IMG/VR virus record: IMGVR_UViG_3300037087_000760
Location: 146,984 to 210,983 of that record
Reading direction: 5' to 3' (one strand)
DNA: 64,000 bases
Shown: positions 7,426 to 25,050 of the stretch, in pieces
Layout: the number at the start of each line of letters is the position of its first letter
Numbering within the stretch: the stretch's first letter is position 1
Notes under the pieces: model-generated
Told to the model about the DNA's origin: nothing
The model's input: only the letters and a program-made list of their open reading frames with translations
Database searches by the model: none
Made by a program: the position numbers and the translations under genes

Positions 7426-7509
7426 GGCTGGGTGGCGGAACTGGTAGACGCGCGGGACTTAAAATCCCGTTCCTGTATGGGAGTGTGGGTTCAATTCCCA
7501 TCCCGGCTA
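7426..7509 (+). tRNA. tRNA-Leu(TAA), long variable arm
   Basis: Cloverleaf, anticodon loop CT-TAA-AA; AATATATATAAT motif directly upstream. Confidence 0.92.
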
Positions 7510-8326: not shown

Positions 8327-8458
8327 GAGTGTATTAGTGTAACGAAAGCACAGGCTGTTTGATGTTAGAGTAAGTTTTAGACGGCGGTCTTGGTCATTAG
8401 ATTGACAAAACTGAAATATCGTAGGTCGGATGAGGGTTCAAATCCCTCATACATTCCA
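8327..8458 (+). ncRNA. tRNA-like RNA with an 80-nt domain in place of the anticodon arm
   Basis: (G)AGTGTAT/ATACATT(C) acceptor, GTGT/GCAC D arm, GAGGG-TTCAAAT-CCCTC T arm. Confidence 0.65.
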
Positions 8459-8557
8459 AAAGGTGATGTGATGGAATAGTTTTTTCCATCCTGTTTTAAG
8501 GAGAGAACATTTGAGGATAAAGCGAGCCTACATCACAAACAGGATCACCAAATAAGG

Positions 8558-8640
8558 TGAGGGAAACAAAGTAGAGTACCTTTTCTTCGGATTGAGGCCT
8601 TCGGGCCGAGGGAAATGACCTGTTCTCCCTCAACTTTTTT
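8558..8640 (+). ncRNA. Structured RNA with UUCG hairpin, followed by U-tract (end of ncRNA array)
   Basis: TGAGGGA/TCCCTCA closing stem, GGCC-TTCG-GGCC, then T run. Confidence 0.5.
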
Positions 8641-8682
8641 AAAAAACGAAATTAAATTAAACTTTTTGAAAAAAAAGTTCTA

Positions 8683-8720
8683 AAATAGAAAAAAGAGACT
8701 TTATAAGTTAAATATATAAT
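8683..8720 (+). promoter_or_regulatory. Extended promoter of the Ile/Asn/Met/Gln tRNA operon
   Basis: AAATAGAAAAAAGAGACT-N10-AATATATAAT, near-identical to the - strand element at 23441-23478. Confidence 0.75.
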
Positions 8721-8731
8721 AAAAAAACATA

Positions 8732-8802
8732 TCCAGTAGGAACGTAAGTTCCGTTTTGGGACGCTCAGCGACCCAGAGGGGAAAACTCCCCGCAACTGGA
8801 TA
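8732..8802 (+). ncRNA. Four-way junction RNA in the leader
   Basis: TATCCAGT/ACTGGATA closing three hairpins (GGAAC-GTAA-GTTCC; TGGG..CCCA; GGGG..CCCC). Confidence 0.65.
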
Positions 8803-8813
8803 AACTTTTTGAA

Positions 8814-8984
8814 ATGATTATGACACAGAACATCCAAAATATGATTATTAATCAGATACCCGGTAAAAATACCGATTGGATGAACTTTGTCTATAACGAA
8901 TATAGAAAAAACCCAATCGGAAACGATTGGGTTTTTTTGTTTTATATGTCCACCATAGTTTTTAACTGGTGTTCTTTGAAATAA
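8814..8984 (+). CDS. Putative attenuator leader peptide MIMTQNIQNMIINQIPG... (56 aa, not in ORF track)
   Basis: 14 of first 15 codons are Met/Ile/Gln/Asn, using ATG, ATT, ATC, ATA, CAA, CAG, AAC, AAT; overlaps attenuator segments. Confidence 0.75.
   Translation: MIMTQNIQNMIINQIPGKNTDWMNFVYNEYRKNPIGNDWVFLFYMSTIVFNWCSLK
8906..8938 (+). terminator. Intrinsic terminator of attenuator (3:4 hairpin)
   Basis: CCCAATCG-GAAA-CGATTGGG-TTTTTTT; 5' arm also complementary to CCGATTGG at 8872-8879. Confidence 0.9.
8971..8981 (+). promoter_or_regulatory. boxA-like antitermination element GTTCTTTGAAA (also + 7766, 9431; - 22921-22931, 23252-23267)
   Basis: Resembles rrn boxA; copies noticed at entries to RNA-gene arrays. 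Confidence 0.6.
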
Positions 8985-9061
8985 TGATAAATCATATTCG
9001 GATTATAAGTTCAAAACTGATAATCTGAACATAAAATGTAAATAAAAATAAATTAGAAACT

Positions 9062-9439
9062 ATGGAAGATTTAAAAAAATTAGCGGATGATCTGAGTAAT
9101 CTCACCGTATTAGAGTGTTACCAGTTAGCTAAGATAATGAAAGAAGAATACGGAATAGAATCAAATACAAAAATTGTTGGTGTGAATGTATCACCAGTTC
9201 CAACTAAGGTAGTTGAAATTGAAAAAACAAGTTTTGATGTGATTCTAAAATCAGCAGGAACAACCAACAAACTTGGTGTTATCAAATCCATCAAAGAAAT
9301 GACAGGACAAAGTTTATTGGAAATTAAGAATCTCGTTGATAATGCACCAGCGAAACTAAAAGAAAATGTAAGTAAAGATGAAGCTATGTCTTTACTGAAT
9401 ATTCTGAAAGAATTAGGTGCAGAAATTGAAGTTCTTTGA
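9062..9439 (+). CDS. rplL: Ribosomal protein bL12 (L7/L12)
   Basis: NLTVLE..LAKIMKEEYGI, EKTSFDVIL, KLGVIK, ELGAEIEV. Confidence 0.95.
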   Translation: MEDLKKLADDLSNLTVLECYQLAKIMKEEYGIESNTKIVGVNVSPVPTKVVEIEKTSFDVILKSAGTTNKLGVIKSIKEMTGQSLLEIKNLVDNAPAKLKENVSKDEAMSLLNILKELGAEIEVL

Positions 9440-9450
9440 AAATAATAAAA

Positions 9451-9580
9451 AATGTAGTAGCGAGTTTGAGTGTTACTTCGTAGCTCAACAGTCGAGCATC
9501 AATCAGTTAAATTGAAAGTTGTGGGTGCGATTCCCACCGAACCCGAAAGGGTAATATCACTCAATGATTATCTCTACATT
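9451..9580 (+). ncRNA. tRNA-Asn(GTT) mimic embedded in a long terminal stem (Y-RNA-like)
   Basis: D arm, TCAAT-CAGTTAA-ATTGA anticodon arm and T arm on a 4-bp TTCG/CGAA stem continuing into TTGAGTG/CACTCAA and ATGTAG/CTACAT; no free acceptor end. Confidence 0.7.
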
Positions 9581-9588
9581 TTTTTAAT

Positions 9589-9666
9589 GGGTGTGTAGCT
9601 CAGTAGCGTTAGAGCGCGACACTGATAATGTCGAGGTCGTAGGTTCAAGTCCTACCATACCCACCA
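9589..9666 (+). tRNA. tRNA-Ile(GAT)
   Basis: Canonical cloverleaf, encoded CCA. Confidence 0.95.
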
Positions 9667-9676
9667 AAAATAACAC

Positions 9677-9758
9677 TGTGTCGTACGCAGCCGATCCTGA
9701 TAAGATCGAGAACTTGTAACTGGTGTTGAAAATGTGGGTTCGAATCCCACCGGCACAA
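9677..9758 (+). tRNA. Atypical D-armless tRNA-Ile(GAT)-like
   Basis: TGTGTCG/CGGCACA, CGATC-CTGATAA-GATCG, normal T arm, 8-nt D replacement, 25-nt variable region. Confidence 0.7.
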
Positions 9759-9767
9759 CAAAAATTT

Positions 9768-9839
9768 GGGTTGGTAGTACTAATGAAAAACGGCGGCCTG
9801 TTAAGCCGCGAGATGTGGGTTCAAGTCCCACCCGGCCCT
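9768..9839 (+). tRNA. tRNA-Asn(GTT), weak D arm
   Basis: GCGGC-CTGTTAA-GCCGC, intact acceptor and T arms. Confidence 0.8.
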
Positions 9840-9848
9840 CAATATTAT

Positions 9849-9922
9849 TCCTCAGTAGCTCAGCTGGTTAGAGCATTTGACTGTTAATCAAAGGGTCACA
9901 GGTCCAAATCCTGTCTGGGGAG
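9849..9922 (+). tRNA. tRNA-Asn(GTT)
   Basis: Canonical cloverleaf TCCTCAG...CTGGGGA-G. Confidence 0.93.
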
Positions 9923-9928
9923 CAAAAT

Positions 9929-10004
9929 TCGGAATGTTTGTCTGTGATTGGGTGCACCACACAGATAATAAAGGAAAAATGTGGTTCAATTCCACCATTC
10001 CGAG
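9929..10004 (+). ncRNA. tRNA-like RNA (acceptor + T arm + one hairpin), no clear anticodon
   Basis: TCGGAATG/CATTCCGA-G, TGTCTGTG/CACAGATA, GTGG-TTCAATT-CCAC. Confidence 0.55.
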
Positions 10005-10012
10005 CAAAAATA

Positions 10013-10104
10013 GGGAGTGTAGCTGATTTGGTTTAGCGGCAGACCGTTAATCTGTGACTGAAAATATTGAAATAAAGTTGGTTCGACCCCATCCTCTCCC
10101 GCCA
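10013..10104 (+). tRNA. tRNA-Asn(GTT) with long AT-rich variable region
   Basis: GCAGA-CCGTTAA-TCTGT, ends G-CCA. Confidence 0.75.
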
Positions 10105-10112
10105 GTACATAT

Positions 10113-10192
10113 TGTGGTGTATCCCCCATGTCTTATAAACATGCATTAAAAGGGTAATAGCGTGTATGTGGGTTCGAGTCCCACCACCACAA
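10113..10192 (+). tRNA. Atypical D-armless tRNA-Ile(TAT)-like
   Basis: TGTGGTG/CACCACA, CATGT-CTTATAA-ACATG, same architecture as 9677-9758. Confidence 0.7.
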
Positions 10193-10197
10193 CAAAT

Positions 10198-10269
10198 GGT
10201 CGGGTAAGCTAACGGTTAAACTGGATGTCTTATACACATCTTTTAAGAGTTCGAATCTCTTCCTGACTA
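10198..10269 (+). tRNA. tRNA-Ile(TAT)
   Basis: GATGT-CTTATAC-ACATC, cloverleaf. Confidence 0.88.
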
Positions 10270-10274
10270 CAAAT

Positions 10275-10350
10275 GGCGAGATAGCTCAGACGGTTTTAGA
10301 GCGTCGGATTCATAACCCGGAGGTCGAGGGTTCAACTCCCTCTCTCGCTA
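10275..10350 (+). tRNA. tRNA-Met(CAT), elongator type
   Basis: Cloverleaf, loop TTCATAA. Confidence 0.9.
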
Positions 10351-10358
10351 CCCAAAAT

Positions 10359-10430
10359 AGTCCTATGGCGTAACGCGAAGCGTGACTCCCCTTGAAGGAG
10401 ATGGTACTGGTTCGAATCCAGTTAGGACTG
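10359..10430 (+). tRNA. tRNA-Gln(TTG)
   Basis: AGTCCTA/TAGGACT-G, loop CCTTGAA. Confidence 0.82.
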
Positions 10431-10435
10431 CAAAT

Positions 10436-10521
10436 ATCAATGTGAACGGAATGGTTATCGTAGAGGTCTCATAAGCCTTTCAACTCGTTGAGTTGTGGTG
10501 GTTCGAATCCACTCATTGATA
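10436..10521 (+). tRNA. tRNA(CAT) Met or Ile2, long variable arm
   Basis: GAGGT-CTCATAA-GCCTT, CAACTC-GTT-GAGTTG variable hairpin. Confidence 0.8.
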
Positions 10522-10527
10522 CAAAAT

Positions 10528-10598
10528 AGTCCTGTGGTGTAACGGTAGCATGCGAGCCTTTGAAGCTTTGGGTACAGATTCGAATTCTGTCAGGACTG
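10528..10598 (+). tRNA. tRNA-Gln(TTG)
   Basis: Cloverleaf, loop CTTTGAA. Confidence 0.88.
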
Positions 10599-10604
10599 CA
10601 AAAT

Positions 10605-10677
10605 TGTTCTGTCGTATAATTGGCAGTACAGCACCCTCTGAAGGTGTATGGTGTAGGTTCGAGTCCTACTGGAACAG
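10605..10677 (+). tRNA. tRNA-Gln(CTG)
   Basis: Cloverleaf, loop CTCTGAA. Confidence 0.9.
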
Positions 10678-10682
10678 CAAAT

Positions 10683-10754
10683 GGTTCTGTGGTGTAATGC
10701 GTAGCACGAGTGATTCTGAATCACTTGGTTAAGGTTCGAATCCTTACAGAACTA
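10683..10754 (+). tRNA. tRNA-Gln(CTG)
   Basis: Cloverleaf, loop TTCTGAA. Confidence 0.88.
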
Positions 10755-10755
10755 C

Positions 10756-18835: not shown

Positions 18836-19825
18836 ATGACTAACAAAAAAGATAAAAAAATAGGACTTGTATTTGGAAAGTTCATGCCCCTTCATAATGG
18901 ACACATGGCCTTGATTCGATTTGCACAATCTCAGTGTGATAAACTATATGTATTGTTATGTGAGGCTAATGATGAACCAATATGTGGAAAAATTCGATTA
19001 GGATGGTTATTGGACACATTCAAAGATGATTTGAACATAGAAGTGAGAATTACTGATGTTCAATTACCATTAGTTCCCTATTCATCTAAATTAATAGCTA
19101 AAATGTGGGCCAAATTTTTCAAGGAAGAATTTCCTGATGTGAATATTCTATTTACTTCGGAAAGATATGGTGATTTCACAGCAGAATTCATGGGTATAAA
19201 ACATATACTTTTTGATAATGACAGAGAAGAAGTTTTTGTATCAGCCACCAAGATTCGTAATCATCCACTCATTTATTGGGATTATATTCCCGACATTGTA
19301 AAACCGTACTTTGTTAAGAAAATTTGTATTTGTGGAACAGAATCAACGGGAAAAAGTATATTAACCGAAAAACTTGCTAAGAGATTTCATACTAACTTTG
19401 TTCCAGAATGGGGTAGAACTTTATGTCCGTCTACAACTGAATGTACCATAGATATAATTAAACAAATCGGTAAATCCCACGCTACTGACATTCACAATAA
19501 AATACAATTCTCACATAAATTTTTATTTTCAGATACCGACCTGAATACAACAAAAATGTATTCCTATTTCTTATTCAATGAAATACCGAAATTTGATGAT
19601 TGGATTGAACAAGAAAATAAGTTCGATTTGTACATTTTTCTTGAAAACGATGCCCCTTTTATTCAGGATGGAACACGACTGACAAAAGAAAGAAGGGATG
19701 AACTACGAGATTACCATTACGACTACCTTATATCTCAAGGATGTAAAGTTGAAATTGTAACTGGTAGTGATTGGGAAATCAGGTATGAAAAAGCTGTCAG
19801 AATAATTGAGGAAAATTTCGGATAA
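18836..19825 (+). CDS. nadR: NadR-type NMN adenylyltransferase / ribosylnicotinamide kinase (no HTH)
   Basis: FGKFMPLHNGH, SATKIR, P-loop GTESTGKS, EWGR, DTD, QDGTR. Confidence 0.93.
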   Translation: MTNKKDKKIGLVFGKFMPLHNGHMALIRFAQSQCDKLYVLLCEANDEPICGKIRLGWLLDTFKDDLNIEVRITDVQLPLVPYSSKLIAKMWAKFFKEEFPDVNILFTSERYGDFTAEFMGIKHILFDNDREEVFVSATKIRNHPLIYWDYIPDIVKPYFVKKICICGTESTGKSILTEKLAKRFHTNFVPEWGRTLCPSTTECTIDIIKQIGKSHATDIHNKIQFSHKFLFSDTDLNTTKMYSYFLFNEIPKFDDWIEQENKFDLYIFLENDAPFIQDGTRLTKERRDELRDYHYDYLISQGCKVEIVTGSDWEIRYEKAVRIIEENFG

Positions 19826-19830
19826 GAATC

Positions 19831-20121
19831 ATGAGAAATTACAAATTAGAAAAATTACAAGCCGGAGAAAGTTTCGTTACCAGTGAAAAAGGTAATTCCA
19901 TGTCACCAATTATTAAGTCGGGACAAAAACATAAACTTGTTCCCGCCACTTGGAGAGATGTAGATGTAGATGATATAGTCTATTGTAAAGTCAAAGGAAA
20001 CTTCTACACTCACCTTGTAAAAGCAAAAAATGAAGATAAGGGTTGCTTAATAGGTAACAACAAAGGTGGAGTTAACGGATGGACTAAACAAGTCTATGGT
20101 AAGGTTGTAAAAATCCTTTAA
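19831..20121 (+). CDS. S24/S26 peptidase-like small protein
   Basis: GNSMSPII, DIVYC, THLV. Confidence 0.55.
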   Translation: MRNYKLEKLQAGESFVTSEKGNSMSPIIKSGQKHKLVPATWRDVDVDDIVYCKVKGNFYTHLVKAKNEDKGCLIGNNKGGVNGWTKQVYGKVVKIL

Positions 20122-21377
20122 ATATAAATATTCAGAATTTCATTCAGTTTAATTTTGGTTTCCTCATTCAGTGATTTCCCCTTATTTTCATTATACAGAA
20201 TCATAAAGGAACTTACCACTTTATTGAATTTGAAACTATCCGTATAACCAAATACAGTTTCCTTAAACTTTTCAATATCAACAGTTTCCTTACCAGTTCT
20301 TGACATCCATTCATCCCATTTTTTGAAGAATCTGATGATACCATTGATGTTCTGGTCTGACCATTGACCACCATCGAAATAATGTCCGATGAACATCAGA
20401 TAAAACCTCAGAACCTTTGGATCATAGTTATCTGGATTAACAATATTTCCTTTACTTTTGGCCATCTTGATTCCATTATTCAGAATCATTCCCTGATGCA
20501 CCACTTTTTTAAAAGGTTCTTCCTCACTGATCATCCCAATATCATACAGGAACATATTAATAAAACGAGCATATATCAGGTGCATGCAAGCGTGTTCACT
20601 TCCCCCGATGTACAGATCAACTTGTTTATATTTATCTTTACTACACAGTTCATTTTCGTTGTACGAATCACAATAACGGATAAAATAGAAACTACTATCT
20701 ACGAAAGTATCCAGAGTATCAGTCTCACCTTCAATTGGAATAGGACATCCCCAACTTCTTTGTCTACTGACACACCAATCATGTTGATTCTCCAGCCAAT
20801 CTCTTTGAGAATTGATTGTTTTCTTTGGGTAATCAATCCAATCCAGATTTTTTATCAGTCGGTCTTTATATTCGGTGATTTTAAAATACCATTGTTCCAT
20901 TTGACGAATTTCAATGGTCGTATTACATCTATCACATTTACCATCTTTGACCTGTTCACGAGCCAGAACAGTTCCACAACTTGGACACCAATTTACTTCA
21001 CCCCAAGCTTTGTAAGCCAGTCCATGTTCTTTCAGTTTGATAAATATCCATTGTGTCCACTTCTGGTAAGATGGATCTGAAGTAATTACTTTTTCTTCAA
21101 AAGAAGTGTCCATTCTTTCCATCTGTTTACGGAAATTCTCAATGTTTTCATAGGTAACTTCTCTGGGATCTCTATTGACTGATTTGGCGTAATTTTCAGC
21201 TGGAAGTCCAAAGGAATCATACCCAAACGGTTGAAAAACTTTAACTCCTTTATATCTTTGGTATCGACAATAACTGTCTACGATAGCGTAATTATAATAA
21301 TGTCCGATGTGCAGTCCGTTTCCGCTCGGATAAGGAAACATGACAACCACCATTTTTTCATTTTTTATGTCGTTCAT
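20118..21377 (-). CDS. leuS: Minimal leucyl-tRNA synthetase (no CP1 editing or C-terminal domain)
   Basis: MFPYPSG.GLHIGH, GYDSFGLPAEN, DWCVSRQRSWG, DTFVDSS, GGSEHA..HL, KMAKSKGN; only 419 aa. Confidence 0.92.
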   Translation of the reverse strand: MNDIKNEKMVVVMFPYPSGNGLHIGHYYNYAIVDSYCRYQRYKGVKVFQPFGYDSFGLPAENYAKSVNRDPREVTYENIENFRKQMERMDTSFEEKVITSDPSYQKWTQWIFIKLKEHGLAYKAWGEVNWCPSCGTVLAREQVKDGKCDRCNTTIEIRQMEQWYFKITEYKDRLIKNLDWIDYPKKTINSQRDWLENQHDWCVSRQRSWGCPIPIEGETDTLDTFVDSSFYFIRYCDSYNENELCSKDKYKQVDLYIGGSEHACMHLIYARFINMFLYDIGMISEEEPFKKVVHQGMILNNGIKMAKSKGNIVNPDNYDPKVLRFYLMFIGHYFDGGQWSDQNINGIIRFFKKWDEWMSRTGKETVDIEKFKETVFGYTDSFKFNKVVSSFMILYNENKGKSLNEETKIKLNEILNIYI

Positions 21378-22137
21378 TGTCTTTTAATTTGTTTGAGAAA
21401 TGTTCAATTGAGATATTATGTTTTTTGATTGTTTTATAAATAAGACTTCTATTACTTTCGTTATATTCCATATTTAAATTTTTCATAATATCTCTATAAG
21501 ATTTTGATTTAGAAATAATCCCTTTAAAAAGATTAATATCATAATCGAAATAATCATAATTTCTTTTATTTGTGAAATCTTTCCAATCATCTTTTTCAAT
21601 TATTTCCTTATCTTCGTATCTAAAATAACACCCACCAGCCGTCCCTTTCAATTGACAACTAAATTTAATTTGTTGTCTAAAAATACCTGTTTCTCTTTCA
21701 GCTCCTCGAAGGCTAATGAATTTTTTTAAAGGAGTAAAATTTTTATCATACATTATAATTGATTTCTTATTTGGATTGGATATTTTCATTAGTTTTTTAC
21801 TTTTATCAGAATGTTTTTTTCCTGTCCAATCTACACCATCTCCACCATCTGTACTATTCTTCAATCTAAATCCCCAGCATTTAAATTGAGAAATCCAATA
21901 TCTTTCTAATGAATCAATATTATTTTTATCACCGATATCAAGTATTTCTATTATTGGTGAAAGATTTTTATTTTTGAGATATTTTAACCATTTATTTTTT
22001 CTTGTCCAAGGTTCTTGACGGATACTCCAATTTGACATATGTCCCCTCAATCTTTTTTCTAAATTTTTGGTCTTACCTACATATTTTATAATTTTATCTT
22101 CTGGGTCTGTTAATGTATAAATATAAAATTCCATCAT
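21358..22137 (-). CDS. GIY-YIG homing endonuclease with NUMOD-like repeats
   Basis: YIYTL..KYVGKT..RL..H, E.YWI, LKNSTDGGDG, KKHS. Confidence 0.88.
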   Translation of the reverse strand: MMEFYIYTLTDPEDKIIKYVGKTKNLEKRLRGHMSNWSIRQEPWTRKNKWLKYLKNKNLSPIIEILDIGDKNNIDSLERYWISQFKCWGFRLKNSTDGGDGVDWTGKKHSDKSKKLMKISNPNKKSIIMYDKNFTPLKKFISLRGAERETGIFRQQIKFSCQLKGTAGGCYFRYEDKEIIEKDDWKDFTNKRNYDYFDYDINLFKGIISKSKSYRDIMKNLNMEYNESNRSLIYKTIKKHNISIEHFSNKLKDNERHKK

Positions 22138-22186
22138 AGATTTTTATTTCTATATATAAAAATTTATGTGTAATGTTTCATAGTTG

Positions 22187-22260
22187 TAACCCCACCCGGA
22201 CTTGAACCGAGATATTTAGTTTCTAAAACTAACGCCGCTAACCAATTAGGCCATGGGGTC
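22187..22260 (-). tRNA. tRNA-Leu(TAG), short variable loop (atypical)
   Basis: 74 nt, TTAGT-TTTAGAA-ACTAA, A73. Confidence 0.85.
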
Positions 22261-22270
22261 ATTATTTTAG

Positions 22271-22344
22271 TAGTTCTGTTCGGACTTGAACCGAAATATT
22301 TGGTTTTTGAAACCAACGCCGCTAACCAATTAGGCCACAGAACC
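22271..22344 (-). tRNA. tRNA-Leu(CAA), short variable loop (atypical)
   Basis: 74 nt, TTGGT-TTCAAAA-ACCAA, A73. Confidence 0.85.
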
Positions 22345-22349
22345 TTTTG

Positions 22350-22434
22350 TATCGATGGTGGGACTCGAACCCACACCCTCGTAATGAGGAACGGCTTCTG
22401 AGGCCGTCGCGTCTACCAATTCCGCCACACCGAC
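22350..22434 (-). tRNA. tRNA-Leu(CAG)
   Basis: Class II cloverleaf. Confidence 0.93.
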
Positions 22435-22486
22435 AAATTTCAAATATTTACCAGTTTTTTGAAAAACTGTTCAAAATTTGATTTTG

Positions 22487-22560
22487 TAGCACCTGTCGGA
22501 TTCGAACCGACAAACTTGGATTTTAAGACCAATATGGTTGCTCTATTACATCAAGGTGCC
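22487..22560 (-). tRNA. tRNA-Leu(TAA), short variable loop (atypical)
   Basis: 74 nt, loop CTTAAAA, A73. Confidence 0.8.
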
Positions 22561-22565
22561 ATTTG

Positions 22566-22649
22566 TAGCCTCTGTGGGAATCGAACCCACACGGTCTTTC
22601 GACCACTGGATTTTGAGTCCAGAGCGTCTACCAATTCCGCCAAGAGGCC
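22566..22649 (-). tRNA. tRNA-Leu(CAA)
   Basis: Class II cloverleaf. Confidence 0.93.
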
Positions 22650-22654
22650 ATTTG

Positions 22655-22739
22655 TGGGAGTTGATGGAGTTGCACCACCCGAGCCCTGAGGACAACAGAT
22701 TTACAGTCTGCCCCGCTACTACTTACGGAATAAACTCCC
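22655..22739 (-). tRNA. tRNA-Tyr(GTA)
   Basis: Class II cloverleaf, loop CTGTAAA. Confidence 0.88.
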
Positions 22740-22743
22740 AAAG

Positions 22744-22828
22744 TGACCAAGGTGGGATTCGAACCCACACGGGCGTAAAGCCCAACGGATTTTAAGTCCG
22801 TCGCGTCTACCAGTTCCGCCACAAGGCC
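22744..22828 (-). tRNA. tRNA-Leu(TAA), two U-U mismatches in acceptor stem
   Basis: Class II cloverleaf. Confidence 0.85.
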
Positions 22829-22836
22829 AATTTCAG

Positions 22837-22918
22837 TGTCCATAGGGGGACTCGAACCCCCACGCCTTTCGACAATAGTTTCTTAGGCTATCGCGTCTAC
22901 CAGTTCCGCCATACGGAC
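22837..22918 (-). tRNA. tRNA-Leu(AAG)
   Basis: Class II cloverleaf, loop CTAAGAA. Confidence 0.88.
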
Positions 22919-22935
22919 AATTTCAAAGAACTCAG

Positions 22936-23007
22936 TGGGAATAGAAGGATTCGAACCTACAAATCACGATTTTACAGACCGCTGAGCGACCACTGCTCAA
23001 TATTCCC
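22936..23007 (-). tRNA. tRNA-Tyr(GTA), short variable loop (atypical)
   Basis: 72 nt, GCGGT-CTGTAAA-ATCGT. Confidence 0.82.
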
Positions 23008-23012
23008 GTTTG

Positions 23013-23085
23013 TGGAAGTACAAGGATTCGAACCTCGAATACACGGTGTTACAAGCCGCTGAGCGACCATCCGCTCACTACTTCC
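23013..23085 (-). tRNA. tRNA-Tyr(GTA), short variable loop (atypical)
   Basis: 73 nt, loop TTGTAAC. Confidence 0.8.
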
Positions 23086-23086
23086 T

Positions 23087-23242
23087 TGGTGGGGGTGGAT
23101 GGAATTTCACACATCGGATGATAAGTTTACAGCTTACGAAGTAACTGTTTTACATCACTACAATTGATTGGCCTTCGATAAAGGAAACAGTCCAATTCAG
23201 AATCCTTATCAATCGAGATACTTTGGTACAGTAATCACCCCC
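23087..23242 (-). ncRNA. tRNA-Tyr(GTA) mimic with D arm replaced by a 100-nt stem
   Basis: GGGGGTG/CACCCCC-A-CCA, TAAG-CTGTAAA-CTTA; shares TGTAGT..GTTACTTCG and TATCTC with 9451-9580. Confidence 0.7.
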
Positions 23243-23274
23243 TTTTATTTTCAATATGTTTAAGAACATGCAAC

Positions 23275-23304
23275 AAAAAACCCATCACTTTTTCAAGGAC
23301 GGGT
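23275..23304 (-). terminator. Intrinsic terminator of Leu/Tyr attenuator
   Basis: ACCCGTC-loop-GATGGGT-TTTTT on - strand; 5' arm also pairs with AGGATGGGTT in leader. Confidence 0.85.
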
Positions 23305-23333
23305 CTTTCTGATTCTATGATAATATTTAAAGT

Positions 23334-23420
23334 TTATCTTTCAGCAATACTAACCCATCCTCGATTTTGATAGAGGTATAAATACAAATAATATAGGTTA
23401 ATATTTACTCTGTTTTTCAT
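23334..23420 (-). CDS. Putative attenuator leader peptide MKNRVNINLYYLYLYLYQNRGWVSIAER (28 aa, not in ORF track)
   Basis: Nine consecutive Leu/Tyr codons CTA TAT TAT TTG TAT TTA TAC CTC TAT upstream of a Leu/Tyr-only tRNA operon. Confidence 0.85.
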   Translation of the reverse strand: MKNRVNINLYYLYLYLYQNRGWVSIAER

Positions 23421-23440
23421 AACTTTTATTCTTTCTGAAA

Positions 23441-23478
23441 ATTATATATTAAATAATTTTAGTCTGTTTTTTCTATTT
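23441..23478 (-). promoter_or_regulatory. Extended promoter of the Leu/Tyr tRNA operon
   Basis: AAATAGAAAAAACAGACT-N10-AATATATAAT. Confidence 0.75.
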
Positions 23479-23516
23479 ATACGACAAAGGTATGTAAAAG
23501 TTTTAAAATAAAAAAA

Positions 23517-24113
23517 TTATTTTGAAGTTTTCTTGAAATAGTCTATCACTTCTTTGAATTTAACATCAGATTTTATTTCATTAAAATCTAAATCATAGAT
23601 GTCATATACATATTCTTTTGTGTTGTTTTGGTCTACATATATATAAACTATAAACTTGGGATTAACAAGTCTAACATCGAATATGACCTGTGATTCTTTA
23701 TCTTGATCGTTATAGGATTTTATTGCCTCTGGTGAAGTGAATACTAATCCATATCTACCATAAGAACCCAGATTCTTAGTGTATCTACTGTCCATTTTCT
23801 TAGTAGTACAATCCCAAGCCACACTGAAATTACCTGATTGTACTTCTTTCATTCCTGTTTTGGTTTTAGTCAGGGATGAATACCAAGAACCGATACCTCT
23901 GAATCCTGTTTTAAGGATTCCCTCGATATTTTCTTTTTTGGTAAAGTGTATAATGGGTGAATCGGATGGTAATTTTTTAGAACCTATCCAAGAAAATCCT
24001 CTTTGTGGTCTTTTATTCTCAAAAGAAAGGATACAATTATGAAAATCATCGATTGTTTCGATTCTTTGGATGACTTCCTTATTCTTTCTGGTAAACTCAG
24101 TGAAATTATCCAT
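23517..24113 (-). CDS. Tagged protein, ADP-ribosyltransferase-like fold
   Basis: MDNFTEF start; IIHFT..IEGILKTGF..ESQVIF. Confidence 0.5.
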   Translation of the reverse strand: MDNFTEFTRKNKEVIQRIETIDDFHNCILSFENKRPQRGFSWIGSKKLPSDSPIIHFTKKENIEGILKTGFRGIGSWYSSLTKTKTGMKEVQSGNFSVAWDCTTKKMDSRYTKNLGSYGRYGLVFTSPEAIKSYNDQDKESQVIFDVRLVNPKFIVYIYVDQNNTKEYVYDIYDLDFNEIKSDVKFKEVIDYFKKTSK

Positions 24114-24564
24114 ATACTGAAGGTTCATTTTCAGTATATATTAAATCAAATTGAATGGTTTATTTTCAATTTCCTTATACCATTCGAGTATTATTTCAGC
24201 GTTTCTTTTATTAGAATATCCTTCAAAACTATCAGCTATCTTCCATGAATAACCAGCAGCACCGCCCGAAAGAATAGTTCGCCATCTCCATCTTATTTTT
24301 ATCTGAGGATAAAACATACCACCTTTCTCACGGATTCTACTTTTTCTCATAATTAATTTTTTGAGGCCTGATCATTCTCCATATTTTTTTTAAGACTTGG
24401 AATGAGAACATCTTTGGTGAATTCTCGTACCTTATCGGCCAATAACCCGGCTTGTCCAGAAAGAATTGAACCACCCAAAGAATGAATAACGATCAAAAAA
24501 TTAGGATCATTATATTTTTTCTCCAGTTCTTCCAAGTCTTGAATAATAAATTTTTCCTGATCTG

Positions 24565-25050
24565 TCATGATTTCCAATTTTTGAATGGGATTTTAGCTAA
24601 ATTACAATTATAATATTTACTATCCCCTGTAACTTCTTCTTTAATCCAATCTGGTTTTTCAAATGATTCATTTTCAGAATCCAGTTCAATCTCAGCTACT
24701 ATTAATCCACCGTTATGTCCAAAAAACACATCAACTTCCCAAGTATGTCCTTTGTATGGAATGATGTATCTCGATTTGACAATGAAATTTTTCTCACAAT
24801 AGTCTACGATAAGATCAACGGCATCCCCAAAAGGAATTTCATATTCATATTCTTTTCGTGATATAAGTCCAGATCCTTTGACAGTCATGAATCCTTTCTT
24901 TCCAAAAGTTCTAATTCGAACTAATTTTTCATTATCTTCGAACATGAAACCTTGACGAACCTCCACAGATTTATATTTATCTTTAATCTGTAAAAACTTT
25001 TCTTCGTCAACAAGAAATTTTCTTTCGATTTCTAAATTTTTATTTTTCAT
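24565..25050 (-). CDS. CYTH domain protein
   Basis: EIERKFLV, VRIR, EYEYEI, WEVDVF, VAEIEL, EVTGD. Confidence 0.93.
   Translation of the reverse strand: MKNKNLEIERKFLVDEEKFLQIKDKYKSVEVRQGFMFEDNEKLVRIRTFGKKGFMTVKGSGLISRKEYEYEIPFGDAVDLIVDYCEKNFIVKSRYIIPYKGHTWEVDVFFGHNGGLIVAEIELDSENESFEKPDWIKEEVTGDSKYYNCNLAKIPFKNWKS

What the first reader, a model, noticed from the sequence alone, without database searches (positions are those of the whole stretch)
20118..23492. Leu/Tyr tRNA operon gated by a Leu/Tyr leader-peptide attenuator (tRNA-depletion sensor)
Seen: all 11 RNAs in this - strand operon carry Leu (TAA x2, CAA x2, TAG, CAG, AAG) or Tyr (GTA x4) anticodons. Upstream is a 28-aa ORF (23420-23334) with nine consecutive codons CTA TAT TAT TTG TAT TTA TAC CTC TAT, i.e. 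four different Leu codons and both Tyr codons. Three alternative helices exist: 1:2 AATATTAACCTAT/ATGGGTTAGTATT (13 bp), 2:3 AGGATGGGTT/GACCCGTCCT (10 bp), and a 3:4 terminator ACCCGTC/GATGGGT plus U-tract. Known: this is the architecture of trp/his/leu attenuators, which control amino-acid biosynthesis genes. Inference: stalling on Leu/Tyr codons (host tRNA cleavage by anticodon nucleases, or uncharging) antiterminates and releases replacement tRNAs and possibly the downstream LeuRS. I know of no described phage tRNA operon regulated this way.
Basis: partly seen in the sequence, partly recalled or inferred. Interest (0 to 1): 0.96.

Follow-up and report, generated by a model that had tools for sequence, protein, structure and literature searches.

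The report
Codon-matched attenuators gate phage tRNA operons
A huge uncultured phage places a tiny "test" gene made of leucine and tyrosine codons, followed by a switchable stop signal, in front of its leucine/tyrosine tRNA genes, and related phages do the same for every other tRNA cluster with matching codons, which points to a previously undescribed way for viruses to make tRNAs on demand.

Summary
Downstream lie 10 Leu/Tyr tRNAs, one odd tRNA-like RNA, a GIY-YIG endonuclease gene and a truncated LeuRS gene.

The decisive evidence is comparative:
- The unit belongs to a family found in about 40 metagenomic contigs and in two published, unannotated megaphage genomes (LR745206.1 and LR756501.1).
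- Every unit has the same 5' block, a short ORF, a copy of the terminator's 3' arm inside the ORF just after the codon run, and a terminator.
- The codon run changes with the tRNAs downstream. GGGCGRDDR precedes Gly/Cys/Arg/Asp tRNAs, NIQNMIINQI precedes Asn/Ile/Gln/Met, SKHSKHFSSSSKWF precedes Ser/Lys/His/Phe/Trp, and a 20-codon run precedes Thr/Met/Asn/Leu/Val/Ile/Arg.
- The mean cognate run is 9.2 codons against 2.9 when leaders and arrays are permuted (0 of 300,000 permutations reach it). The signal exists only in the ATG frame.
- Region 2 co-varies with region 3.

This is best read as classical ribosome-mediated attenuation applied to phage tRNA operons. I found no prior description. Function in vivo is untested, and the proposed trigger (host tRNA cleavage) is speculation.

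The parts
23485..23492 (-). TACCTTTG, a Bacteroidota-type -7 promoter box (TAnnTTTG); probable start of the leader transcript a few nt downstream
   Evidence: Read. TAnnTTTG lies within 70 nt upstream of the conserved block in 22 of 38 units, against 5.9% of random 72-nt windows. Its promoter function is inferred.
23442..23478 (-). Conserved 5' block AAATAGAAAAAACAGACT-N9-TAATATATAA shared by all units of the family; role unknown (5'-UTR element or promoter part)
   Evidence: The same block precedes otherwise unrelated leaders in about 40 contigs.
23334..23420 (-). Leader ORF, 28 codons plus stop: MKNRVNINLYYLYLYLYQNRGWVSIAER*
   Evidence: It is conserved in frame at 27-28 codons in L023, L056, L068, L084 and L086; L084 has a 3-nt deletion and L086 a synonymous TAC>TAT change inside the run.
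23370..23396 (-). Sensor run of nine Leu/Tyr codons: CTA TAT TAT TTG TAT TTA TAC CTC TAT
   Evidence: The probability of such a run is below 5e-6. Every codon can be read by a tRNA of the array (tag, gta, caa, taa, aag).
23393..23405 (-). Region 1 (AATATTAACCTAT), which pairs with region 2
   Evidence: The helix has 10-13 bp and -16 to -18 kcal/mol in the Leu/Tyr leaders. One column shows T-A, T-G and C-G in different phages.
23346..23363 (-). Region 2 (CGAGGATGGGTTAGTATT), inside the ORF 3' of the run. It imitates the terminator's 3' arm and pairs with region 1 or region 3.
   Evidence: The 2:3 duplex is -17 to -20 kcal/mol, z = -5.5 against shuffled upstream sequence.
23294..23305 (-). Region 3 (GACCCGTCCTTG), the terminator's 5' arm and the antiterminator partner
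23275..23286 (-). Region 4 (GATGGGTT) plus the T6 tract; together with region 3 it forms an intrinsic terminator
   Evidence: The simple scanner missed it because the loop is 11 nt.
23245..23267 (-). Post-terminator box GTTCTTAAACATATTGAAAATAA, conserved after nearly all terminators of the family; role unknown
23087..23242 (-). Non-canonical tRNA-like RNA (GGGGGTG...CACCCCC-ACCA with a CUGUAAA loop); first gene after the terminator
   Evidence: It is conserved in L023, L056 and L086 with covariation in the acceptor stem. No tRNA tool calls it.
22186..23084 (-). Array of ten tRNA genes: Tyr gta x3 (two weak), Leu aag, taa, caa, taa, cag, caa, tag
21358..22137 (-). GIY-YIG homing-endonuclease-like ORF (259 aa)
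20118..21377 (-). Truncated LeuRS (419 aa: catalytic core, no editing domain or C-terminal domains), probably the last gene of the operon
   Evidence: A 76%-identical homologue in LR745206.1 has its own Leu-rich leader. In LR756501.1 it follows a Leu tRNA array.
8683..8938 (+). Second unit of the same family in this window. Block at 8683-8719; leader starts at ATG 8820 (MTQNIQNMIINQI...); region 2 at 8871-8879; terminator at 8910-8938. It gates the bL12 gene (9062-9439) and the Ile/Asn/Met/Gln tRNAs (9477-10755).

Best explanation
The leader is a ribosome-mediated (leader-peptide) transcription attenuator that gates a phage operon of Leu and Tyr tRNA genes, and probably the GIY-YIG and mini-LeuRS genes behind them.

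Proposed mechanism. Steps 1-3 are inferred from the anatomy, from covariation and from constrained folding; none is shown experimentally.
1. Transcription starts just upstream of the conserved block, and a ribosome loads on the 28-codon ORF.
2. If charged Leu or Tyr tRNAs are scarce, the ribosome dwells on the nine-codon run and covers region 1. Region 2 stays free and pairs with region 3 as soon as region 3 emerges. The terminator cannot form, and RNA polymerase reads on into the tRNA genes.
3. If decoding is fast, the ribosome runs over region 2 (or region 2 is captured by region 1 behind it). Region 3 then pairs with region 4, and transcription stops at the T tract.

The result is a negative feedback loop: the operon's own products relieve the stall that induces it.

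The unit is one member of a modular family in Mahaphage-type megaphages. Each tRNA cluster, sometimes together with the bL12 or LeuRS gene, has its own leader, and the codons of that leader list the amino acids of the cluster's tRNAs.
For: Anatomy in the window.

A homologous leader in a second phage shows compensatory changes in 2:3 and 3:4. Each region 2 pairs with its own region 3 at -18 to -20 kcal/mol, against -10 to -15 with another phage's region 3.

Leader-to-array matches across the family:

| Source | Leader run | tRNAs downstream |
|---|---|---|
| L023 | GGGCGRDDR | Asp, Arg, Gly x5, Cys |
| window, L070 and others | NIQNMIINQI | Ile, Asn, Met, Gln |
| L061 | TTTTATRPVGTTGRPA | Pro, Thr, Arg, Ala, Val, Gly |
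| L073 | LQCLYIEMDDNQI | Met, Tyr, Leu, Gln, Asn, Glu, Ile, Asp, Cys |
| LR745206.1 | TTMNLNMTMNLTLNVVNITL | Asn, Arg, Leu, Val, Ile, Thr, Met |
| LR745206.1 | PQPQDQDP | Pro, Asp, Gln |
| LR756501.1 | SKHSKHFSSSSKWF | Trp, His, Phe, Lys, Ser |
| LR756501.1 | all six Leu codons | five Leu tRNAs, then LeuRS |
| LR756501.1 | YNDYCIND | Ile, Cys, Asp, Asn, Tyr |

Statistics:
- The mean longest cognate run is 9.2 codons, against 2.9 for permuted leader-array pairs (0 of 300,000 permutations reach it).
- The run is 11.5 codons in the ATG frame, against 2.5 and 1.7 in the other two frames.
- Region 2 lies at nt 50-90 of the ORF (nt 50-70 in most families), just 3' of the run. The 2:3 duplex scores z = -3 to -7 against shuffled sequence in most families and about -2 to -3 in the Arg/Pro/His/Ala family (L060, L078, L080, L088, L096).

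Constrained folding of the transcript lacking region 4: region 3 is sequestered (P 0.6-1.0) while the A site is anywhere up to the end of the run. It is released (P 0-0.5) once the ribosome covers region 2. This holds in all 13 leaders tested.
Against: - Nothing shows that the ORF is translated or that the terminator works. Only 8 of 39 leaders have a Shine-Dalgarno-like sequence, though Bacteroidota rarely use one (own knowledge).
- At equilibrium the full-length leader switches with ribosome position only in the Leu/Tyr and Gly/Cys/Arg/Asp families. In most others the terminator always dominates, so antitermination there would have to be kinetic.
- Without a ribosome, most leaders are predicted to be antiterminated. 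A strong 1:2 helix exists only in the Leu/Tyr family. The logic may therefore be simpler than in trp.
- The window's second unit has a 1-nt insertion that lets its ORF run through the terminator.
- One array in LR745206.1 carries the block but no leader.
- Three leaders (L092, L094, L095) match their arrays poorly. Their contigs are short and ARAGORN misses non-canonical tRNAs.
Confidence: 0.85

Rival explanations
1. The mechanism is the same, but its purpose is defence sensing. The leader detects loss of host Leu/Tyr tRNAs to anticodon nucleases or host shut-off and releases replacement tRNAs.
For: The design reports slow decoding whatever its cause. [quoted passage not shown] All tRNA clusters are gated in this way, not only those for rare codons.
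Against: Nothing in the sequence points to nucleases in particular. The leaders together cover nearly all amino acids (19 of the 20 occur in the cognate runs or their arrays), which fits general supply-and-demand control better than a response to nucleases that target a few anticodons. This reading is not exclusive of the best explanation.
Confidence: 0.25
2. The leader RNA works without translation. Its triplets pair directly with the anticodons of tRNAs (T-box-like, or as a tRNA sponge), or a protein binds the leader.
For: No experimental evidence of translation exists. The block conserved in all units could be a binding site for a factor.
Against: - The cognate triplets are contiguous and in a single frame that starts at an ATG and ends at a stop. 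The other frames carry no signal.
- Indels inside the run are multiples of three (L084). Substitutions stay within the cognate set, for example GGGCG, VDCGCG and TICGCG.
- No T-box or other Rfam family matches.
- The leaders are too short for a T-box-like scaffold.
Confidence: 0.04
3. The short ORFs are translated but act in another way: as functional micropeptides, by controlling Rho-dependent polarity or RNA processing, or as translational rather than transcriptional switches.
For: A few C-terminal residues are conserved within a family (..NRGWV.IA..). The conserved post-terminator box has an unknown role.
Against: - The conserved C-terminal codons coincide with region 2, which co-varies with region 3.
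- In the window's second unit a frameshift changes the peptide but not the RNA helices.
- Across families the peptides share nothing except composition that tracks the tRNAs.
- Every unit carries a canonical hairpin plus T tract.
- tRNA genes have no translation to switch.
Confidence: 0.06
4. It is coincidence or insulation. An AT-rich spurious ORF happens to lie between a promoter and a terminator that merely ends the upstream gene's transcript.
For: Leu and Tyr codons are AT-rich and the genome is about 30% GC. Other tRNAs in the window, such as Leu taa at 7426, have no leader.
Against: The permutation, run-length and frame statistics argue against it. GC-rich runs such as GGGCGRDDR and RPVGTTGRPA occur in the same AT-rich genomes, exactly where Gly, Arg, Pro and Ala tRNAs follow. 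Conservation and covariation add to this.
Confidence: 0.02

Closest known systems
Leader-peptide transcription attenuators of enterobacterial amino-acid operons (trp, his, leu, thr, ilvGMEDA, ilvBN, pheA)
   Same: Both have a short promoter-proximal ORF with a run of regulatory codons. Both have mutually exclusive 1:2, 2:3 and 3:4 helices and an intrinsic terminator before the first structural gene. Multivalent leaders are also known: thr senses Thr and Ile; ilv senses Leu, Val and Ile. These are textbook features, stated from own knowledge; the anatomy here comes.
   Different: - The regulated genes are tRNA genes (plus bL12 and LeuRS), not biosynthetic enzymes. The signal is therefore relieved directly by the operon's own RNA products.
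- The system is in a virus.
- Leaders list up to nine different amino acids and often sample several synonymous codons.
- All units share a conserved 5' block.
- The 1:2 helix is weak or absent in most families.
- There is no sequence or Rfam homology. The best hit is Thr_leader at 24 bits, below its threshold of 55, on the other unit in the window.
pheST (pheM leader) attenuator of E. coli
   Same: A leader peptide with cognate codons controls a gene of the translation apparatus (an aminoacyl-tRNA synthetase) by attenuation (own knowledge). Here LeuRS lies behind Leu-sensing leaders in the window, in LR745206.1 (leader MINNNVNILLLPLT) and in LR756501.1.
   Different: In the window the synthetase is the last gene of a tRNA operon. 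The main cargo is tRNAs.
T-box riboswitches
   Same: They link the expression of translation-related genes to the charging state of a specific tRNA through a terminator/antiterminator switch (own knowledge).
   Different: T-boxes read a single specifier codon by direct RNA-tRNA contact, without a ribosome, and have a large conserved scaffold. None of that is present here: there is no Rfam hit, and the signal is tied to one reading frame.
tRNA arrays of large phages (T4, T5, huge phages of Al-Shayeb et al. 2020)
   Same: This is the same kind of cargo. LR745206.1 and LR756501.1, which carry the system, come from that study, and their tRNAs, synthetases and bL12 were reported there (PMC7162821).
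   Different: That paper describes no regulation of the arrays: the words 'attenuat' and 'leader' do not occur in it. The GenBank records carry no annotation.

Membership tests
Ribosome-mediated (leader-peptide) transcription attenuators | Short ORF with a start codon close behind the promoter and ahead of the regulated genes | tested here: met
   The ORF is at 23420-23334, 65 nt after a TAnnTTTG box. All 39 units with enough sequence have an ATG-started ORF of 14-56 codons.
Ribosome-mediated (leader-peptide) transcription attenuators | Run of codons cognate to the regulated function | tested here: met
   The window has nine Leu/Tyr codons ahead of Leu/Tyr tRNAs. Over 15 units the mean cognate run is 9.2 against 2.9 permuted (0 of 300,000), and the signal is frame-specific.
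Ribosome-mediated (leader-peptide) transcription attenuators | Intrinsic terminator between the leader and the first structural gene | tested here: met
   In the window: GACCCGTC, an 11-nt loop, GATGGGTT and T6. In other units: hairpins of -8.5 to -18 kcal/mol followed by T5-T7. This is in silico only.
Ribosome-mediated (leader-peptide) transcription attenuators | Antiterminator (2:3) mutually exclusive with the terminator, maintained in evolution | tested here: met
   The 2:3 duplex is -11 to -20 kcal/mol; z is -3 to -7 in most families and about -2 to -3 in the L060/L096 family. Own 2:3 pairing is 5-9 kcal/mol better than cross-phage pairing. Compensatory changes are seen.
Ribosome-mediated (leader-peptide) transcription attenuators | Anti-antiterminator or pause helix 1:2 overlapping the regulatory codons | tested here: inconclusive
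   It is clear in the Leu/Tyr leaders: 10-13 bp, -16 to -18 kcal/mol, with one covarying column. It is weak in most other families, where the ribosome-free state is predicted to be antiterminated.
Ribosome-mediated (leader-peptide) transcription attenuators | Ribosome position on the run versus beyond it selects the structure | tested here: met
   This rests on constrained folding only. In all 13 leaders region 3 is sequestered while the A site is up to the end of the run and is freed when region 2 is covered. The full-length equilibrium switch appears only in two families.
Ribosome-mediated (leader-peptide) transcription attenuators | The leader is translated and read-through responds to charged-tRNA supply in vivo | not testable with these tools
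   This needs Term-seq, Ribo-seq, reporter assays or in vitro coupled transcription-translation assays.
Curated Rfam leader families (e.g. Thr_leader RF00506) | Match to the covariance model at the gathering score | tested here: not met
   No leader family matches in 19000-24500 at E <= 1, and none matches at gathering score in the whole window. Thr_leader scores 24.3 bits against its threshold of 55 on the other unit.
T-box riboswitch | Stem I with specifier loop and conserved T-box sequence (Rfam model) | tested here: not met
   There is no T-box hit at E <= 1. The leader from ATG to T tract is only about 145 nt, and the signal is bound to one reading frame.

The most novel reading that the evidence does not exclude
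Megaphages of the Mahaphage clade run an autonomous system that makes tRNAs on demand. Their tRNA repertoire is split into operons. Each operon is gated by a leader peptide whose codons are a 'barcode' of the tRNAs behind it, so that slow decoding of any listed codon opens that operon, and in places also the genes for ribosomal protein bL12 and LeuRS. If so, these would be the first attenuators known to control tRNA genes and the first family of leader-peptide attenuators in viruses. They would also be a natural, modular set of codon-specific translation-speed sensors covering nearly all amino acids.
Probability: 0.8. Interest if true: 0.95.

Novelty: new variant of a known kind. Interest (0 to 1): 0.92.

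Why it matters
- It would show that viruses regulate their own tRNA supply by sensing decoding speed. That adds a feedback layer to the long-standing question of why large phages carry tRNA arrays, synthetases and ribosomal proteins.
- It extends leader-peptide attenuation, so far tied to amino-acid biosynthesis and a few synthetase genes, to tRNA genes, with multi-amino-acid leaders of up to nine specificities.
- The leader-to-array correspondence is a free functional annotation. It predicts which non-canonical tRNA-like genes in these arrays decode what.
- It gives a natural library of codon-specific stall sensors for synthetic biology.
- It implies transcription-translation coupling in the predicted Bacteroidota hosts.
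- The system sits unannotated in published genomes (LR745206.1, LR756501.1), so it can be tested at once.

Tried and rejected
- Megablast of the region against 50,697 phage records found only tRNA-sized matches.
- A degenerate peptide-like DNA pattern in IMG/VR returned 19 unrelated hits inside a protein gene, plus the two true leaders.
- An exact protein look-up with a mis-called start found nothing.
- The block pattern in 185,579 reference genomes gave four chance hits inside coding genes of Asgard and Oscillospiraceae MAGs. None has a leader or tRNAs nearby. I therefore found no cellular or prophage copy.
- PHROGs and tblastn of large window proteins gave almost nothing useful for taxonomy. 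The LeuRS core was the link to LR745206.1.
- The sigma-70 promoter and terminator scanner was uninformative and missed the terminator because of its 11-nt loop.
- A search for a longer phage promoter consensus was not significant.
- Column-based pair counting on the MAFFT alignment failed. Region 3 is misaligned by an indel, and region 2 is so similar to region 4 that the script picked the wrong copy. I replaced it with per-sequence duplex calculations; a first attempt with badly cut segments was discarded.
- Equilibrium folding of full-length leaders does not reproduce a switch in most families.
- The first 194 kb of LR745206.1 hold one tRNA and no unit. I did not fetch 194-352 kb or 498-635 kb, so the census of that genome is incomplete.
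- A structured-looking stretch at 8488-8646 is not better folded than shuffles.
- Eight literature searches found no description of attenuators on tRNA operons or in phages. The library is large but not complete.

Full report
**1. The observation**

On the - strand, ORF 23420-23334 encodes MKNRVNINLYYLYLYLYQNRGWVSIAER*. Codons 9-17 are CTA TAT TAT TTG TAT TTA TAC CTC TAT.

- 1:2, 23405-23393 with 23358-23346, 13 bp including G-U pairs.
- 2:3, 23363-23353 with 23304-23294, 11 bp.
- 3:4, GACCCGTC / GATGGGTT followed by T6 (23305-23275).

The 221-nt leader folds better than all 200 shuffles (z = -3.5). Its minimum-free-energy structure contains 2:3, while its centroid contains 1:2 plus 3:4, so the alternatives compete.

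Downstream, ARAGORN finds 8 tRNAs at default settings and 10 at a relaxed threshold: Tyr gta x3 and Leu aag, taa, caa, taa, cag, caa, tag. Rfam agrees, weakly for two of them. It has a 7-bp acceptor-like stem and an ACCA end, and no tool calls it.

After the array come a GIY-YIG endonuclease ORF (22137-21358) and a 419-aa LeuRS catalytic core (21377-20118). The core matches PDB 1h3n at 1e-83 and TIGR00396 at 9e-114, which is below that model's cutoff because the editing and C-terminal parts are missing.

**2. Is it more than chance?**

Leu plus Tyr make up 13% of this phage's proteins. A run of nine such codons in a 27-codon ORF never appeared in 200,000-400,000 simulations. The stronger evidence, however, is comparative.

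**3. Relatives**

The window is part of IMG/VR contig 3300037087_000760, which is 211 kb long.

A second phage (L003/L026, identical in L023-L025) has a homologous leader, MKNIVNTNLYYLYLYLYPNRDWVDIAMK*, of the same length. It is followed by a different terminator (AACCCGGTCT / GGATCGGGTT) and again by a Tyr/Leu tRNA array.

Region 2 changes in step with region 3. The sequences are GAGGATGGGT in the window, GAGACTGGGT in L023, GAGGCTGGGT in L056 and GAGGTTGGGT in L086. Each region 2 pairs with its own region 3 at -18 to -20 kcal/mol, but at only -10 to -15 with another phage's region 3. In L086, region 3 GG>AA is matched by CT>TT in both region 2 and region 4.

Inside the run, the only changes seen are a 3-nt deletion (L084) and a synonymous TAC>TAT (L086).

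**4. A family of leaders that track their tRNAs**

In L023 two further units share the 5' block AAATAGAAAAAANAGACT-N9-WAATATATAA:
- MKNILTIGGGCGRDDRFLIGFVLR* lies ahead of Met, Asp x2, Leu, Arg, Gly x5, Met and Cys tRNAs.
- MTQNIQNMIINQIPVKIPIG* lies ahead of a bL12 gene and Asn, Met and Gln tRNAs.

The second of these also exists in the window. Its block is at 8683, its ATG at 8820 and its terminator at 8910-8938. It lies ahead of bL12 (9062-9439) and of Ile, Asn x3, Ile, Met and Gln tRNAs.

Scanning metagenomes for the block returned 41 loci with about 40 distinct units in at least 11 leader families. The LeuRS core led to LR745206.1 (634,780 bp), and then to LR756501.1 (735,411 bp). Both are unannotated Mahaphage-clade genomes.

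Examples of leader and array:

| Source | Leader run | tRNAs downstream |
|---|---|---|
| L061 | TTTTATRPVGTTGRPA | Pro, Thr, Arg, Ala, Val, Gly |
| L073 | LQCLYIEMDDNQI | Met, Tyr, Leu, Gln, Asn, Glu, Ile, Asp, Cys |
| L096 | RMSRHMAPA..HAPQGSG | Arg, Pro, His, Ala, Gln, Gly, Met, Ser |
| LR745206.1 | TTMNLNMTMNLTLNVVNITL | Asn, Arg, Leu, Val, Ile, Thr, Met |
| LR745206.1 | PQPQDQDP | Pro, Asp, Gln |
| LR745206.1 | ILLLPL | mini-LeuRS gene |
| LR756501.1 | SKHSKHFSSSSKWF | Trp, His, Phe, Lys, Ser |
| LR756501.1 | MIQEQMQQIQ | Met, Gln, Ile, Glu |
| LR756501.1 | YNDYCIND | bL12, then Ile, Cys, Asp, Asn, Tyr |
| LR756501.1 | all six Leu codons | five Leu tRNAs and LeuRS |

Over 15 units the mean longest cognate run is 9.2 codons, against 2.9 when leaders and arrays are permuted (0 of 300,000 permutations). 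The mean cognate fraction is 0.52 against 0.26.

The signal is confined to the ATG frame: 11.5 codons against 2.5 and 1.7 in the other frames.

The poor matches (L092, L094, L095) come from short contigs. L092's leader is homologous to the LR756501.1 Ser/Lys/His/Phe/Trp leader, whose array is complete.

**5. Architecture across families**

In every family a copy of the terminator's 3' arm (region 2) lies inside the ORF, at nt 50-90 from the ATG (nt 50-70 in most families) and immediately 3' of the run. It can form 9-13 bp with the terminator's 5' arm. The z-scores against shuffled sequence are -3 to -7 in most families and about -2 to -3 in the Arg/Pro/His/Ala family (L060, L078, L080, L088, L096).

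I folded the nascent transcript up to the terminator loop with a 28-nt ribosome mask. In all 13 leaders region 3 is sequestered (P 0.6-1.0) while the A site is anywhere up to the end of the run. It is released (P 0-0.5) once the ribosome covers region 2.

Full-length equilibrium folding gives a clean switch only for the Leu/Tyr and Gly/Cys/Arg/Asp leaders. Elsewhere the terminator always wins. In those families the antiterminator would have to act kinetically, as it does in trp (own knowledge).

Without a ribosome, most leaders are predicted to be antiterminated. A strong 1:2 helix is a feature of the Leu/Tyr family only.

**6. Context**

A Bacteroidota-type -7 box (TAnnTTTG) lies mostly 15-21 nt upstream of the block in 22 of 38 units, against a 5.9% background. 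In the window it is TACCTTTG at 23492-23485. The block is therefore probably the start of the transcript. Its role is unknown. One array in LR745206.1 carries it without any leader.

A box GTTCTTWRAA..TGAAA follows nearly every terminator.

According to the literature, LR745206 comes from a Japanese sub-surface sample (PMC9723777). [quoted passage not shown]

**7. Mechanism**

The best reading is classical ribosome-mediated attenuation:
- A ribosome slowed on the run leaves region 2 free to capture region 3, and transcription reads through.
- A fast ribosome covers region 2, the terminator forms, and transcription stops.

Because the products are the very tRNAs that decode the run, the circuit is a negative feedback on decoding capacity. 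Limitation of any one of the listed amino acids or tRNAs opens the whole operon, so the control is multivalent.

What is shown: the sequence anatomy, the conservation, the covariation, the codon-to-anticodon correspondence and the frame specificity. What is inferred: translation of the leader, terminator function, and the direction of the response.

**8. Comparison and novelty**

The system works like the trp, his, leu, thr, ilv and pheST attenuators. It meets the structural criteria I could test, but it has no sequence or Rfam relationship to them. It is not a T-box.

It differs from them in four ways: the cargo is tRNA genes, the system is in viruses, the leaders are 'barcodes' of up to nine amino acids, and all units share a 5' block.

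Eight full-text searches, and the paper that published two of the genomes, contain no description of it.

**9. Verdict**

I class it as a new variant of a known kind of regulation. Interest is high, and experimental proof is still needed.

Noticed in passing
window 23242-23087 (-): A tRNA-like RNA of about 156 nt (GGGGGTG...CACCCCC-ACCA with a CUGUAAA loop) is the first gene after the terminator. Shorter homologues in L023, L056 and L086 show covariation in the acceptor stem. No tRNA tool calls it, and its fold scores only z = -1.9.
   Followed up: partly
window 22560-22486, 22344-22270, 22260-22186 (-): Three 75-nt tRNAs carry Leu anticodons (taa, caa, tag) but lack the long variable arm of bacterial tRNA-Leu. 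They lie in the same operon as a LeuRS that lacks its editing and C-terminal domains. Who charges them, and with what, is open.
   Followed up: no
window 21377-20118 and 22137-21358 (-): A minimal 419-aa LeuRS core is 76% identical to one in LR745206.1 and has more distant copies in other huge phages. A GIY-YIG homing-endonuclease ORF lies just upstream and overlaps its start by 20 nt.
   Followed up: partly
window 8820-8984 (+): The Gln/Asn/Ile/Met leader of this window has CCC at 8859-8861 where six relatives have CC. Its ORF therefore does not stop in region 2 but runs through the terminator. This is either a real variant or an assembly error in a homopolymer.
   Followed up: partly
window 8728-8805 (+); L093 about 140-215 of the - strand unit: A hairpin-rich insert of about 80 nt lies between the conserved block and the leader ATG. 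L093 has an unrelated insert at the same place. Rfam gives no match.
   Followed up: no
window 9062-9439 (+); L023, L059, L070, L082, L093; L109 about 20330-19950 (-): A phage gene for ribosomal protein bL12 sits between the leader and the tRNAs. The arrangement is conserved as far as LR756501.1, even though the tRNA set and the leader codons differ there.
   Followed up: partly
window 23267-23245 (-), 8963-8985 (+), and most related loci: A conserved box GTTCTTWRAA..TGAAA lies 10-40 nt after the terminators. Its role is unknown: a processing site, a pause site or a promoter part.
   Followed up: no
window 23150-23120 (-), 9445-9475 (+); L023 about 2030 and 2360: The motif GTAGTG...GTTACTTCG recurs in stretches between called tRNAs that look like non-canonical tRNA genes.
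   Followed up: no
window 8328-8456 (+): A 129-nt match to the tRNA model (30.5 bits) is probably a tRNA with an insert. In phage B a tRNA-Thr occupies this position, just before the block of the next unit.
   Followed up: no
L106 (LR745206.1 about 364,800): An array of Met, Glu, Tyr, Ile, Gly and Ala tRNAs is preceded by a block-like motif (GGGAGACAACCTTTTTAATATATA) but has no leader ORF or terminator. Not every array is gated, and the block is not only a leader-translation element.
   Followed up: partly
window 18836-19825 (+), 24565-25050 (-): Neighbouring genes include a NadR-like protein (cytidylyltransferase plus AAA_28 domains) and a CYTH-domain protein.
   Followed up: no
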